29,818 bases of DNA from Macrostomum lignano (GCA_002269645.1 NIVC01004969.1:1-29818), one strand, 5' to 3'. Counted from the stretch's first letter, positions 19,401 to 29,818 are shown. A program made the numbers and translations. Notes: a model not told the origin generated them from the sequence alone.

Positions 19401-19659
19401 CTGCAAGAAAGTTTTAAATTATGTCCATAAATTTCATATCTCTGATGTACCACTGAGCACATACTAAATGTCTAAATATGTTTAAGTAAAACCAAGAAAT
19501 TCTTCTAAGAAAGAAGTGCTTTGACAATGAGCTGAGTTGACTGAACCGAAATAAGATGTACATGTAATGGACACGCAGAAAGATCAAAAGGTCTGAGCCG
19601 AGTAAATCCCAGCGCAGTAGAATGCATGAGGGGGCTTCTGGGACAAAATTTTCACCTCC

Positions 19660-19948
19660 TCCATAATCCACCTAAATCCATCCATATTATCCCTGACAGA
19701 ATAAGAAAAAAAGGGGGTCGCACCTGCTCACAAAACATCGTCCATAATCCCATTAAATCCATCCATATTATCCCTGACAGAATCAGAAAAAAAGGGGGTC
19801 GCACTCGCTAACAAAACGTCCTCCATAATTCCATTAAATCCATCTATATTATCCCCGACAGAATCAGAAAAAAGGGGGTCGCACTCGCTCACAAAACGTC
19901 CTCCATAATCCCATTAAATCCATCCATATTATCCCTGACAGAATCAGA
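19660..19948. repeat. 80-81-bp tandem repeat, about 3.6 copies (TCCATAATCCCATTAAATCCATCCATATTATCCCTGACAGAATCAGAAAAAAAGGGGGTCGCAC...)
   Basis: Units start near 19660, 19741, 19822 and 19902. Confidence 0.9.
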
Positions 19949-20347
19949 GCATAACAGGTGTCCTACTTGTTCCGAAAACTTCAAACATAATCCCATTATA
20001 ATCCACTGACATCCACCCATAGCATCTCTAAAACAATCAGAAAATAATCTGCATTCTTCTCCCCACATTCAATCCGCAACGTGCTACCAGATCCCTAAGA
20101 CTTTAAATTATCAGCGCAGGGTGCTCATCCTCCGAAAAAAATCGAAATTCTCAATAAAAATGCTTCCAGTTGTCTCCCGAGGTTCTTATTATAGTAACTC
20201 ACGCTGAACAGTTCTGCCAAGCTTGTTAATGTCTAATAAGATCTATTAATACACAATGCTCTTACATCTAAAATCAACGCTTGCAACTATTTATCTAAGG
20301 GAAAATGTAAAACTACCCTCTAGGGCACCAGCTACAGAGCCAGCTAA

Positions 20348-20462
20348 AAATGTTCCTCAGCCGAACAAATGTTCTGTCGCCGAACAAATGTTCCTCAGCC
20401 GAACAAATGTTCCTCAGCCGAACATTTGTTCCTCAGCCCAACAAATGTTCCGCCGCCGAACA
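20348..20462. repeat. 19-bp repeat, about 6 copies, each with a dyad GAACA-NN-TGTTC
   Basis: GCCGAACAAATGTTCCTCA unit; one copy has the spacer TT instead of AA. Confidence 0.85.
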
Positions 20463-20880
20463 TGTACAGAGCAAATATCTCTTCCCCCCATGCAAAAGCT
20501 TTATGCCCTTACTAACTCAGAGTACGCAGGCCCCGTATACAGAGAGAACCTCTCTTCCTATACACAAGCTTCTCCTCACCGTGAGCATTTATTTCTACAT
20601 AGCAAGTTCTCTCTCTTTCCACTTCTCTACCTACAGTCAATCCCGCAGCACGTATGGGTATGCTACGTATGGCATACGTATGGCCAACCAAAACCATACC
20701 CCCGATCCTCCATTGTCCCTCGTCCCACAGCTCTTCTCAGTCTACTCAATTCTCTCCCCTTATCCCCAAAGCCAAGTCGTCTCGCCGCTATCAGGCGGAC
20801 ACCCTCCCCCCCCCAAAGTCTGTCGGGTAAGGAAGAAAGCTTATTTATACAACTACTTTTGAAGAGTTACTCGGTTAAAA

Positions 20881-21647
20881 ATGTCTGACTTGTCTGTCAC
20901 ACCAGATCTATCTCTCTTCTCTAAAATTTTACAGCTAAATCAGTTAGCAAAAGATAACAATAAACACGAACTACTCTTATCTGAAGATGATTTAATTCAT
21001 TTAAAAGTTACATTAGATTGCCCCTTAGTACCTAGTTGTGGCAATTTAGAAGATCGATCAAAAAAATTAAATGAAGAGCGCATGGATGTAGATGAGGATC
21101 AAGATCAACCAGCAAGAAAGAAAGTAAAAGTAAAGAAGCAAAAACTACGGCCAACTGGTGAGACGCTTCATCAATATCTTTGCGCAAAAGTATTTGAATT
21201 TGAAGGGGTCGATGAATTTAATCACCCCTATTCTATTGTTGATACGAATATGCCGTTATCTGTAGAAGAACAACTAAAGACGGCAGTCACAAGTTTAAAA
21301 AGATGTAATAATCGTATGCTCATTGCCACATACATCTGTGGTGTATGGCTTAACCACAACGCAGCGAAACATAGAATAGAACATCCTGAAGAAACTGTTA
21401 AATGTAAAAGTTGTGATGATCAGGTTTTGGAGTTTTTGCAACGACATGAGATAACATATTCTAAAAGCACTATTAGAAAAATGTTGTCTCTTAGTAAAAC
21501 ATTACATGATTATCCTCGTTTTTTAAGCTAAATATAACATTTGAGGAACTTTACACCTTAAAAAATGATATTGAAGACATGTTAATGTGTTCAAATAAAT
21601 ATAAAACCTATTGGAGCATGGGTGTTATTCAAATAAAAAAAGAATAG
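20881..21647 (+). CDS. Element-borne hypothetical protein (about 255 aa after a +1 correction at about 21529)
   Basis: 216-aa ORF continues in the shifted frame as (L)NITFEELYTLKNDIEDML..YW..KKE*. Basic NLS-like RKKVKVKKQK and HxxxH..CxxC. Confidence 0.55.
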
Positions 21648-21718
21648 TAAATAAAAATAGTAAAAATGGTAAATAAATATAACTTTTCTTTTCTTTATCT
21701 TCTTAATAATAAGAAGAT

Positions 21719-27200: not shown

Positions 27201-28106
27201 TTACATTTACAGAGGAAGCGTGGATGAAACCCTACATTGATAAGAACACCCAGTTTAGGACCAAAGCAACCAACGACTTTGACAAGAACCTCTTTAAGTT
27301 GGCCAACAACTCTGTCTATGGCAAGACTCTTGAGAATGAGCGGAAAAGAACAAACCTGAAACTTGTTACCTCATCAGAGCCTGCTGTTATTCAGGCAAAT
27401 ATGTCAAAGCCAACATTCAAAGAACTCCATATCTTTAATAGCTACTTAGGTGTGATCATATTTTACAAAACCAAGGTGACGCTGCGCAAGCCGATCTATA
27501 CAGGTGTCACTGTTCTCGACGAATCAAAACGTCTGATGTACCAGTTCTTCTATGCATGAAGCAGCAGTACAAGGATAAAATGAAACTCTTGTACACTGAC
27601 ACAGACAGTTTTATTATGGACATTCAAACAGAAGACATTTATCAGGACATGCTGCAGCAAAAAGATTTGTTTGACTTGTCTGAGTATGATGAATCTTGCA
27701 GGACACAGAATGGCGATCAAGTGTTTGACGCCACTAACAAGAAAGTGATTGGGAAAATGAAGGACGAGATTGCTGGTGACATAATCACTGAATTCATTGG
27801 GTTGAGAGCAAAGTCCTATTTTGTAAAATGTGAGTCGTCAGACCCAATTAAAAAATCAAAGGGAATTCCGAAACGTGTGGTTAGGAAGGAAATTAATGAA
27901 GCTGAATACAGAGACGCCTTGAATTGCAACAAAAAGACATCACATGAGTTCTCAAAGCTACAATCTAAAAACCATATTATTACACAATTCAGCAAAAGAA
28001 GATTGGACTGTCAGGTGCAGATAACAAGAGATTCATTTTTGATGACAATATTAACAGTCTACCGTTCGGGCATTGGAGATTAGGTTTAGGAGGTGATTGG
28101 GTTTAG
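24249..28106 (+). CDS. polB: Protein-primed family B DNA polymerase (pPolB), about 1290 codons, split by about 12 single-base frameshifts
   Basis: GSGW..YDPLKASSYIELP..KKACINVKN.D; Exo I VYADFEC; Exo II HN.KNYD; KGFYPYE; YGLDPAHY; motif A DANNLYGWAM; motif B KLANNSVYGKT; motif C YTDTDS; FIGLRAKSY; C-terminal DNKR..SLPFGH. Confidence 0.95.
25900..26024 (+). other. T4 endonuclease VII-like (His-Me finger) module inside pPolB
   Basis: CHICRKQL..VRDHCHFTGKFRGAAHNTCNLKL, spanning one frameshift at about 25945. Confidence 0.8.
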
Positions 28107-28171
28107 GAGGTTAGGTTTAGGAGGTGGATTTAGGTTTAGGTTTAGAGAAAGTTTAATAAACCTCAATAAAA

Positions 28172-28572
28172 ATGACAACAAATAACTTTCTTGAAGATTT
28201 GGCTAACGAACTGGAAATCCCAAACTTTAGAGGAATATTTATGAGGGACACTCTGCCTGATTTTCCTCTAAGAAAGGAATGCGGCATCATGAACTTTGAC
28301 ACCACCGATAAGCCAGGATCTCATTGGGTTTGCTGGGTGATTGATCCCGATCGCAAGCACAAGTGTTATTACTTCGATAGCTATGGGACGGCAGTACCAG
28401 AAGAGCTAAGAAATTATATGAAGGGAAAAAAAATAAAAAAATTTATCGCTCAGACTTTATTCTCCAAGGTCTTAGCAGTGATATTTGCGGTGAGCTGTGC
28501 ATGACTGTTTTGTATGCAATGACCAAAACACGAAAGACCTACAAGGAAATTATTCTTGGCTGTGTTTCATAG
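28172..28572 (+). CDS. Adenain-like cysteine protease (Polinton PRO); +1 correction in the A-run at 28436-28440
   Basis: GSHWVC (His), YFDSYG (Asp), and after the shift LQGLSSDICGELC (oxyanion Gln and catalytic Cys). Confidence 0.9.
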
Positions 28573-29082
28573 GGGTTCATTGTGCATTTCTCGTTGTCCT
28601 TCTTTCCGACATTTTCTTCTTTCTTTTCGAAGTCTGAGTTCATTTCTCAGCTGACTCATGTCATCAGTACCGACCATGTTCAAGTTCATTCGAATTGATT
28701 GTTCATAAAGATCCTGAATGGTTTTGAACTCATCCTCTGAAATGAACTTATCCTCGATTGCCCTTGAAATGTACCCTATGATTGATGTGTGCACCCCTTT
28801 CTCTTTTACTTGCTTCTCCTGTAGCTGCTTTAGTTTTTTTCGCCTGTTTCGCGCTAATGCTCCAGTAATTGCTGAAATAAGTCCACATGCAGCACCTACT
28901 GAACCGAGTGGATTGCGATTGGGCTGTGATGGCTGGCAAACTGAGACAGCTGCAGCAGATCCAGATAGAACAGACACAGATCCTAGAATCATATTGCTGT
29001 AGTCGAAAAATTTACAGTGGCTGTCATAGCGCTTAATTTTCTTTGTGTTGTGGAAAATATTTTTTTCAAGATCATCTCGCAT
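28567..29082 (-). CDS. 171-aa hydrophobic-hairpin/coiled-coil protein, GasderminX-like Maverick family
   Basis: Basic N-terminus, small-residue hydrophobic hairpin (ILGSVSVLSGSAAAV..PLGSVGAACGLISAITGAL), KKLK, then ISRAIEDKFISEDEF..I, a pattern I recognise from animal Maverick ORFs. Confidence 0.6.
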   Translation of the reverse strand: MRDDLEKNIFHNTKKIKRYDSHCKFFDYSNMILGSVSVLSGSAAAVSVCQPSQPNRNPLGSVGAACGLISAITGALARNRRKKLKQLQEKQVKEKGVHTSIIGYISRAIEDKFISEDEFKTIQDLYEQSIRMNLNMVGTDDMSQLRNELRLRKERRKCRKEGQREMHNEPL

Positions 29083-29522
29083 TTTTGAATCTCCACTAGT
29101 CGAAACTGTGAGAGTTACAAGTAATGACGGGTAGAGTTTTTGTTGCTCATATTGGGGTGCACTAGGTGCACTAGGTGTTGTGGGAGCGTTCGATCATAAA
29201 GAAGAATTTTGAGCATCCATTTTTAGGGAATTTTTAAAAAAAATCGGCAACTAGTTGGTGGTGGTTAGATTTGTTTTACGTTGATTGCTTCGTCTGCAGT
29301 GACGGCAACTCTCTGAATCTGCCTATTCATTATCTGTGAGCTCCATTCTACGCATGATCTCAAACAAGTCGGTTGGATCACTTGTTTCCCTTGTGGTCTG
29401 TGTGCCTCTTCAGCGTCAATGTTTTTGAGATTATGCAAGCGTTCAAGACGACCGATTCTTCTCAACCGATTTCTGCCATTCGGTAAAAACTAAATCTACA
29501 AAGACTTTATTTGCAGTAATTC

Positions 29523-29790
29523 TTACTTTGATTGATCATGCAACGCTGTTGACTGAGTCATGAACTCTTCTAAATTCCTCACTTTACATGTGTTGGTTGC
29601 GACGTTTTCTTTAATTCTATCATGCAATGCTGTTGACTGGTTCATGAACTCTTCTAAATTCCTCACTTTAACTGGTGTTGTGAAACTCCTTTCTTCAAGA
29701 ATACGCATCCGTCTATCAATATGAAATTTCCAGAAGATTAACTGATGAAATCTTAAGCCGTTGATTTGCGAGACTGCCGAAGTTATTTCT
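29523..29790 (-). CDS. Hypothetical ORF fragment with a 28-aa (84-bp) internal repeat KVRNLEEFM.QSTALHD
   Basis: Two copies at about 29536-29586 and 29620-29670. The frame stays open upstream of the Met at 29708 to about 29790. Confidence 0.35.
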
Positions 29791-29818
29791 GACCTAGTTC
29801 ATTAGTTGCGTTTAACAA

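What the first reader, a model, noticed from the sequence alone, without database searches (positions are those of the whole stretch)
19650..29818. Endogenous Maverick/adintovirus-like virus, possibly near-intact
Integrase, pPolB and adenain protease with catalytic residues present are the Maverick/Polinton core (established). Gene order seen: repeats, ORF(+), PLA2(-), INT(+), pX-like(+), pPolB(+), PRO(+), hairpin protein(-), ORF(-). Maturation protease plus entry proteins imply a virion-forming lifestyle (inference). If the host is a free-living flatworm, this lineage is probably poorly described.
Basis: partly seen in the sequence, partly recalled or inferred. Interest (0 to 1): 0.85.

Follow-up and report, generated by a model that had tools for sequence, protein, structure and literature searches.

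The report
Integrated Maverick/adintovirus-like element, cut by window
The right third of the window holds the replication and entry genes of a virus-like Maverick/adintovirus element integrated in an invertebrate (spiralian) genome, a common kind of genomic passenger; its capsid genes are not in the window, and most of its apparent gene breaks look like sequencing errors.

Summary
All but the orphan have homologues in 15-20 kb viral contigs that also encode a double-jelly-roll capsid protein and an A32 ATPase. The lineage is therefore a virion-forming Maverick/adintovirus. "Near-intact" is only partly supported. As it stands the sequence has 10 frameshifts (PolB 8, protease 1, orphan gene 1), one in-frame stop (integrase) and one perfect 79-bp tandem duplication (pX-like gene). 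Every frameshift is a net loss of one base. Two identical-type shifts interrupt the conserved end of the neighbouring host CASP gene, so most are probably assembly errors rather than decay. No capsid, penton or ATPase gene and no terminal inverted repeat lies in the window. The element either runs past the right edge or is truncated, and this cannot be told here. The host's CASP is closest to molluscs and nemerteans (55-62 %), and nothing supports a flatworm. Mavericks are already documented across molluscs and planarians, so this is a new member of a known kind. Interest is modest.

The parts
709..6407 (-). Host neighbour, not part of the element: a CASP/CUX1-type golgin gene with GC-rich exons and introns filled with minisatellites. 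It serves as a control for sequence accuracy. Its last exon needs two net -1 frame changes in its final ~40 codons to read the conserved C-terminus.
   Evidence: (best hits are mollusc, nemertean and annelid CASP at 55-62 %).
19626..20050 (.). Array of 81-bp tandem repeats (four good copies plus a degenerate one). It may be sub-terminal repeats of the element, but membership is not shown.
   Evidence: No inverted partner anywhere in the window.
20348..20480 (.). Six 19-bp tandem units, each holding a GAACA-nn-TGTTC inverted core, about 400 bp upstream of the first gene. Possibly a regulatory or iteron-like array (inference).
20881..21647 (+). Orphan gene ('ORF216 family') of unknown function, interrupted by 1 frameshift. 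Whether it belongs to the element is not shown.
   Evidence: No hit in the word-indexed search. One hit among 1.84 billion representatives (P0163, E 5.4e-16), which lies on a 1.5-kb metagenome contig with no other element gene. The homology continues into a second frame. The model has mean pLDDT 58 and no fold match.
22116..22514 (-). Parvovirus-VP1u-type phospholipase A2 gene of 132 codons, open, with the HD motif present. It is a separate gene here, not fused to pX.
   Evidence: Pfam PF08398 E 4.5e-14. Family profile from 5 relatives E 4.3e-18. tblastn to L007 E 3e-18.
22545..23486 (+). Retrovirus-type (rve) integrase of 314 codons with D,D,E present. It is interrupted by 1 in-frame stop and has no frameshift.
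   Evidence: rve E 1.3e-6; 45-51 % identity to integrases of metagenome loci L027, L029, L032, L050.
23599..24124 (+). Adenovirus pX/mu-like core or membrane-active protein gene, interrupted by one perfect 79-bp tandem duplication that shifts the frame.
   Evidence: Pfam Adeno_PX E 3.4e-7. Duplication at 100 % identity. Frame layout.
24249..28106 (+). [quoted passage not shown] It is full length but split into 9 reading-frame segments, which means 8 frameshifts. A ninth is possible at the poorly conserved N-terminus. No in-frame stop lies inside the aligned parts.
   Evidence: (profile positions 86-1248 of 1253). N-terminal domain alignment.
28172..28572 (+). Adenain-type (clan CE) maturation protease, interrupted by 1 frameshift. 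His and Asp lie in the first piece and Gln...Cys-Gly in the second.
   Evidence: (E 5.8e-29 and 7.6e-4 for the two pieces).
28567..29082 (-). Two-hydrophobic-helix ('hairpin') protein of 171 codons, open. It is conserved in the morphogenetic gene block of relatives L010 and L014. It is probably a virion or membrane-active protein (inference).
29194..29818 (.). Right-hand 625 bp up to the window edge. It has no supported gene and holds an 84-bp tandem repeat (29535-29695) unrelated to the left-end repeats. The status of the element's right end is unknown.

Best explanation
Window ~20-29.8 kb is the left ~10 kb of a Maverick/Polinton-type, adintovirus-like element (order Orthopolintovirales) integrated in the nuclear genome of a spiralian animal. 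It lies beside ordinary host genes. The part in view holds the integration and replication module (rve integrase, protein-primed PolB), the virion maturation protease, and three small membrane-active or core proteins (PLA2, pX-like, hairpin) that relatives encode together with capsid genes. By analogy with the family (inference from established knowledge): the integrase inserts the linear dsDNA genome, the PolB copies it by protein priming, the protease processes virion proteins, and PLA2, pX and the hairpin protein act in the particle during entry. The capsid/packaging module (DJR major capsid protein, penton, A32/FtsK ATPase) and the right terminus are not in the window. The ten frameshifts seen are most likely single-base-deletion errors of the assembly. 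The integrase stop and the 79-bp duplication are then the only candidate real lesions. The copy would therefore be young, but whether it is complete cannot be decided from this window.
For: - Gene identities.
- Homologues of PLA2, integrase, pPolB, protease and the hairpin protein lie on IMG/VR contigs of 15-20 kb. These also carry Pfam DJR-like_dom capsid proteins (E 7e-56 and 3e-41) and a Pox_A32-type ATPase.
- Host context: the CASP gene, with introns, on the same contig.
- Error reading: all 10 element frameshifts are net -1 nt.
- The PolB segments abut on the profile. The only gap, about 38 profile positions, lies at one junction.
- No in-frame stop lies inside the PolB alignments, about 1,050 codons.
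- The host CASP last exon shows two shifts of the same sign. After each, the strongly conserved sequence (15 of 25 and 9 of 12 identities to nemertean and scallop CASP) simply continues in the next frame.
- The densities are similar: about 1.4 per kb in the element and about 1 per kb in about 2 kb of host exons. This is my own rough estimate from ORF lengths.
Against: - No capsid, penton or ATPase gene was found in the window by tblastn with all ORFs of 20 related loci or by family profiles.
- No terminal inverted repeat was found. A truncated or capsid-less copy is therefore equally compatible.
- The host control rests on only two events in one exon.
- The frameshift intervals are not enriched for long homopolymers, though the intervals are too wide for a sharp test.
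- The integrase stop and the duplication are not explained by deletion errors.
- The window's gene order was not seen in any of about 100 related loci.
- The left boundary is not defined, and the orphan gene and the repeats may lie outside the element.
Confidence: 0.75

Rival explanations
1. A dead, truncated fossil. This would be a decayed Maverick fragment that has lost its capsid/packaging module. Its frameshifts, stop and duplication would all be real mutations.
For: Five of seven genes are interrupted as the sequence stands. No MCP, penton, ATPase or TIR lies in the window. The last 625 bp are non-coding repeats. The nearest relative, Logan contig L001, is itself riddled with stops and gaps.
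Against: All 10 frameshifts go the same way. With the two host shifts, that is 12 of 12, roughly 0.0005 under equal odds (my own calculation). Two of these sit in a conserved host gene. There is no in-frame stop in about 1,050 aligned PolB codons and little loss of profile positions at the junctions. That is not what neutral decay with ten indels would leave.
Confidence: 0.2
2. Assembly chimera. On this reading, DNA of an exogenous adintovirus-like virus, or of an associated organism, present in the sample was joined to host sequence by the assembler, so there is no integration at this site.
For: The host-element junction (19.5-20.9 kb) is repeat-rich, which is the kind of place where mis-joins happen. 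No target-site duplication or TIR can be shown. Free adintovirus genomes are known from animal read sets (PMC8502044).
Against: The same single-base-loss pattern occurs on both sides of the junction, which fits one molecule type and one data type. Endogenous Mavericks are abundant in spiralian genomes (PMC10294476; 10.64898/2025.12.11.693146; 10.1101/2025.04.19.649669). There is no positive evidence for a mis-join.
Confidence: 0.05

Closest known systems
Alpha adintoviruses (e.g. the Mayetiola destructor adintovirus class; Starrett et al. 2021, PMC8502044)
   Same: Shares the pfam03175-type protein-primed PolB with a conserved N-terminal Cys-motif domain, an rve integrase, adenain, and a parvovirus-type PLA2 plus an adenovirus-pX-like motif as virion accessory functions.
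   Different: PLA2 and pX are two separate genes on opposite strands here, with the integrase between them. In that class they form one fused 'PLA2X' gene. FtsK, hexon and penton are not in the window. The OTU fold could not be confirmed.
IMG/VR viral contigs IMGVR_UViG_3300019739_000002 (L007), IMGVR_UViG_3300027549_000010 (L010) and IMGVR_UViG_3300040794_000071 (L014)
   Same: These are the best matches for PolB (L007, tblastn E 8.6e-156), protease (47-48 % identity), PLA2 and the hairpin protein. PLA2 and pX-like are separate genes. PolB is followed directly by the protease in L010 and L014.
   Different: They are only about 30-48 % identical. They carry an A32 ATPase, a DJR capsid protein and the u256/u299 genes, some of them between pX and PolB, where the window has nothing. 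The integrase position differs.
Mavericks/Polintons of invertebrate genomes (Repbase Polinton groups; reported in all molluscs analysed and expanded in Dugesia planarians)
   Same: An integrated element with pPolB, rve integrase and adenain protease next to host genes.
   Different: The canonical definition includes terminal inverted repeats and a 5-6 bp target-site duplication. Neither can be seen here because the right end is outside the window.
Adenoviridae
   Same: Shares a protein-primed PolB, the adenain maturation protease (profile hit to 1avp, E 2.9e-8) and a pX/mu-like peptide.
   Different: Adenoviruses have no integrase and no PLA2. This element's genome scale is much smaller, and the protein similarity is distant.

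Membership tests
Maverick/Polinton - Adintoviridae (Orthopolintovirales) | [quoted passage not shown] | tested here: met
   Nine segments cover positions 86-1248 of a 1253-position profile of 15 intact relatives. Pfam DNA_pol_B_2 hits fall on fragments. Motifs Exo I, A, B, C and KxY can be read. The gene is interrupted by 8 frameshifts as the sequence stands.
Maverick/Polinton - Adintoviridae (Orthopolintovirales) | Retrovirus-type rve integrase with a D,D,E triad | tested here: met
   rve E 1.3e-6 at 29 bits against a cut-off of 32.6, covering profile positions 3-99 of 102. Identity to integrases on PolB-bearing contigs is 45-51 %. There is one in-frame stop.
Maverick/Polinton - Adintoviridae (Orthopolintovirales) | Adenain-like (clan CE) cysteine protease | tested here: met
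   Family profile E 5.8e-29. The profile hits ASFV S273R (2.9e-13) and adenain (2.9e-8). Pfam Peptidase_C5 gives only E 3e-3. There is one frameshift between the His/Asp and the Cys.
Maverick/Polinton - Adintoviridae (Orthopolintovirales) | Double-jelly-roll major capsid protein and penton | tested here: inconclusive
   Not found anywhere in the window, either by tblastn with all ORFs of 20 related loci or by profiles of the MCP and u299 families. The window ends 0.7 kb after the last recognisable gene, so absence from the element is not shown.
Maverick/Polinton - Adintoviridae (Orthopolintovirales) | FtsK/HerA-A32 genome-packaging ATPase | tested here: inconclusive
   A 12-locus ATPase profile finds nothing in the window. 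The same caveat about the window edge applies.
Maverick/Polinton - Adintoviridae (Orthopolintovirales) | Terminal inverted repeats flanked by a 5-6 bp target-site duplication | tested here: inconclusive
   No inverted repeat pairs the left region with any other part of the window. The right terminus is presumably outside the window.
Adintovirus PolB (Starrett et al. 2021) | N-terminal OTU-like ubiquitin-protease domain fused to PolB | tested here: inconclusive
   A conserved N..N.D..C motif is shared with 13 relatives. The profile finds no OTU structure by sequence, and the single-sequence model is unusable at pLDDT 32.
Alpha adintovirus, Mayetiola-class virion module | Fused PLA2X gene (PLA2 domain with a C-terminal pX-like domain) | tested here: not met
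   PLA2 (22116-22514, -) and the pX-like gene (23599-24124, +) are separate genes on opposite strands. They are also separate in relatives L007 and L010.

The most novel reading that the evidence does not exclude
The copy may be a very young, essentially undamaged provirus, with at most two real lesions. Its adintovirus-like lineage has no close relative in public collections: the PolB core is at most about 50 % identical to anything in 241 million metagenome records. It has its own gene order (PLA2(-) | INT, pX, PolB, PRO | hairpin(-)) and an orphan first gene. If so, a virus of this lineage was infecting an under-sampled spiralian host recently.
Probability: 0.3. Interest if true: 0.5.

Novelty: new member of a known kind. 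Interest (0 to 1): 0.3.

Why it matters
Maverick/adintovirus elements sit on the border between transposons and viruses. Young copies in poorly sampled animal phyla help map the host range and gene-order diversity of Adintoviridae. This copy adds a divergent lineage with PLA2 and pX as separate genes, a conserved hairpin protein and an orphan gene. It does not change the picture of the family. The practical lesson is about method. The uniform direction of the frameshifts, together with the same defect in a conserved host exon, shows that 'broken genes' in this assembly cannot be read as decay without accurate reads.

Tried and rejected
1. Extending the window: an exact look-up of a window protein found no record, so the contig could not be read past 29818.
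2. Searching for closer relatives. The protein search gave one 1-kb Logan contig at 70-76 % amino-acid identity, itself decayed. IMG/VR and the JGI metagenomes gave nothing above about 52 %.
3. TIR search with low seeds and blastn-short between the left region and the right end found only chance 8-11-mers.
4. Homopolymer association of the frameshift intervals gave no enrichment, but the intervals are too wide for a sharp test.
5. OTU confirmation failed.
6. Function of the orphan gene: Pfam gave none. The AlphaFold model with one homologue had pLDDT 58 with a helical C-terminal half. Foldseek against PDB and BFVD found nothing at E < 0.1.
7. The minus-strand 'ORF' at the right end was rejected as a gene. 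It has no homologue, and an open stretch of that length is expected a few times by chance in six frames of 10 kb.
8. Rfam found no RNA family in the window.
9. A profile of the PolB C-terminal region against PDB sequences gave no significant match.
10. Flatworm host: not supported by the CASP hits, but not excluded.
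Full report
**Setting**

The window is animal nuclear DNA. Positions 1-19.5 kb carry minus-strand host genes. The clearest is a CASP/CUX1-type golgin gene whose GC-rich exons are separated by introns packed with minisatellites. Its C-terminal exon is 55-62 % identical to CASP of gastropods, bivalves, nemerteans and an annelid, and no flatworm protein appears among the 42 hits. The host is therefore a spiralian with no close sequenced relative.

**The observation**

| Gene | Coordinates | Evidence |
|---|---|---|
| Orphan ORF | 20881-21647 (+) | See the section on unexplained features |
| PLA2 | 22116-22514 (-) | Pfam Phospholip_A2_4, E 4.5e-14 |
| rve integrase | 22545-23486 (+) | rve E 1.3e-6 over nearly the whole profile; 45-51 % identity to integrases on PolB-bearing metagenome contigs |
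| pX/mu-like gene | 23599-24124 (+) | Adeno_PX E 3.4e-7 |
| Protein-primed PolB | 24249-28106 (+) | Positions 86-1248 of a 1253-position profile from 15 intact relatives |
| Adenain-type protease | 28172-28572 (+) | E 5.8e-29 to a profile of relatives; that family's profile finds ASFV S273R and adenovirus adenain among solved structures |
| Two-helix membrane protein | 28567-29082 (-) | Homologous to a gene in the morphogenetic block of two viral contigs |

The final 'ORF(-)' at the right end has no homologue, and an open stretch of its length is expected by chance.

**What it is**

A scan of IMG/VR with a PolB alignment returned 18 viral contigs of about 6-31 kb. A scan of JGI metagenomes returned 80 more loci. 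Three contigs, L007, L010 and L014, share PolB, protease, PLA2, a pX-like gene and (L010 and L014) the hairpin gene with the window. They also encode a protein matching Pfam's double-jelly-roll domain (E 7e-56 and 3e-41) and a Pox_A32-type ATPase. The lineage is therefore a virion-forming Maverick/adintovirus in the sense of Starrett et al. (PMC8502044). That paper defines adintoviruses by OTU-PolB, rve integrase, adenain, FtsK, hexon and penton, with PLA2X or gasdermin-X accessory genes.

- The window's PolB is of the Alpha (pfam03175) type and shares an invariant N..N.D..C motif with relatives in the N-terminal domain.
- The OTU fold itself could not be confirmed.
- Unlike the fused PLA2X of the Mayetiola class, PLA2 and pX are separate genes here, as they are in L007 and L010.
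- The window's gene order, PLA2(-) | INT, pX, PolB, PRO | hairpin(-), was not found in any of about 100 related loci. Gene order in this group is very variable.
- No relative exceeds about 52 % identity in the conserved PolB C-terminal part. The exception is a 1-kb Logan contig at about 70-76 % amino-acid identity (69-77 % at the nucleotide level), which is itself decayed and also has PolB followed by the protease.

**What is missing**

tblastn with every ORF of 20 related loci found no trace of a capsid protein, penton-like protein, ATPase or the other morphogenetic genes anywhere in the window. Family profiles found none either. No inverted repeat links the left region (81-bp repeats at 19626-20050) to the right end, whose 84-bp repeat is unrelated. 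The last recognisable gene ends 0.7 kb before the window edge. Either the element continues beyond the window or it is truncated. The contig could not be extended with the tools at hand.

**State of the genes (counts only)**

As the sequence stands:

| Gene | Lesions |
|---|---|
| Orphan gene | 1 frameshift |
| PLA2 | Open |
| Integrase | 1 in-frame stop, no frameshift |
| pX-like gene | 1 perfect 79-bp tandem duplication that shifts the frame |
| PolB | 8 frameshifts, a ninth possible in the unconserved N-terminus, no in-frame stop within about 1,050 aligned codons |
| Protease | 1 frameshift |
| Hairpin gene | Open |

**Are the breaks real?**

Three observations argue that most are not.

1. 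All ten frameshifts have the same sign, a net loss of one base.
2. The PolB segments abut on the profile with little loss, and the flanking sequence is otherwise unspoilt.
3. The host CASP gene shows the same thing. In the last ~40 codons of its terminal exon the reading frame must change twice, each time by the same net -1. This is needed to read the transmembrane segment and the '...EHML.VHG...' tail conserved in all mollusc and nemertean homologues. The conserved residues continue without divergence in the shifted frames.

Twelve events of one sign have a probability of about 0.0005 under equal odds (my calculation). Frameshifts in a conserved, intron-bearing host gene are far more likely to be errors than mutations. 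The densities are comparable, at roughly 1.4 per kb in the element and about 1 per kb in about 2 kb of host exons (rough estimate). A test for association with long homopolymers was uninformative.

I therefore read the frameshifts as single-base-deletion errors of a lightly polished long-read assembly (inference, confidence about 0.7). The integrase stop and the duplication are not of this type and may be real. On this reading the copy is young. Without accurate reads, the 'dead fossil' alternative keeps about 0.2.

**Mechanism**

By homology with the family (established knowledge, not shown here):

- The integrase inserts the linear dsDNA genome.
- The PolB replicates it by protein priming.
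- The adenain-type protease matures virion proteins.
- PLA2, pX-like and probably the hairpin protein are particle components that act on membranes or condense DNA during entry.

Only the presence and integrity of the genes is shown here. Activity, expression and completeness are not.

**Unexplained features**

- The orphan gene has a single relative among 1.84 billion representative proteins, on a short metagenome contig without other element genes. Its model is a helical bundle with no fold match. Whether it and the repeats to its left belong to the element is open.
- About 400 bp upstream of it lies an array of six 19-bp units, each with a GAACA-nn-TGTTC inverted core. This could be a regulatory or iteron-like array.

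**Novelty and score**

Mavericks are reported in every mollusc genome analysed (PMC10294476). They are expanded in Dugesia planarians (10.64898/2025.12.11.693146). Orthopolintovirales insertions have been catalogued in flatworms, bivalves and other invertebrates (10.1101/2025.04.19.649669). This is a new, divergent member of a known kind. Interest is 0.3. The most novel reading still open is a recently infecting, essentially undamaged provirus of an unsampled lineage. It has a probability of about 0.3 and would deserve about 0.5.

Noticed in passing
window 709-860 (minus strand), last exon of the host CASP gene: Two net -1 frame changes interrupt the conserved C-terminus of an otherwise well-conserved host gene. 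This suggests about 0.1 % single-base-deletion errors throughout this assembly, so any 'pseudogene' call in this genome needs accurate reads.
   Followed up: yes
window 1-6990 and 14449-17518: Host introns and flanks are filled with long minisatellite arrays with periods of 19, 22, 24, 25, 27, 29 and 37 bp and up to 55 copies. These create long spurious ORFs in several frames. Exons are about 57-60 % GC, against 24-40 % GC in nearby non-coding DNA.
   Followed up: partly
window 20348-20480: Six tandem 19-bp units each contain an inverted core GAACA-nn-TGTTC. The array lies about 400 bp upstream of the orphan gene and looks like a possible transcription-factor or iteron array.
   Followed up: no
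window 20881-21647 and locus L022 200-808: This orphan protein family is known from only two sequences, the window and one ENA metagenome contig, at 32-37 % identity. The C-terminal half is helical, with no Pfam or fold match.
   Followed up: partly
window 19214-19462 (minus strand): An 82-codon ORF with a poly-Q tract ends in a PPPPSY (PPxY-type) motif just left of the element. It is probably a host terminal exon and was not identified.
   Followed up: no
L010 3034-3567, L014 2285-2986, window 28567-29082: A conserved two-hydrophobic-helix protein family (motifs KKYxR and SISGYISKALxDxxISDxEY) sits in the morphogenetic block of adintovirus-like contigs. It has only a marginal, below-threshold Pfam match (PF20712, E 0.004).
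   Followed up: partly
L010 6656-7400 and L002 5983-8880: The PolB of some relatives starts with a Rho_N/SAP-like DNA-binding motif (Pfam PF07498). No counterpart was recognised in the window's PolB N-terminus.
   Followed up: no
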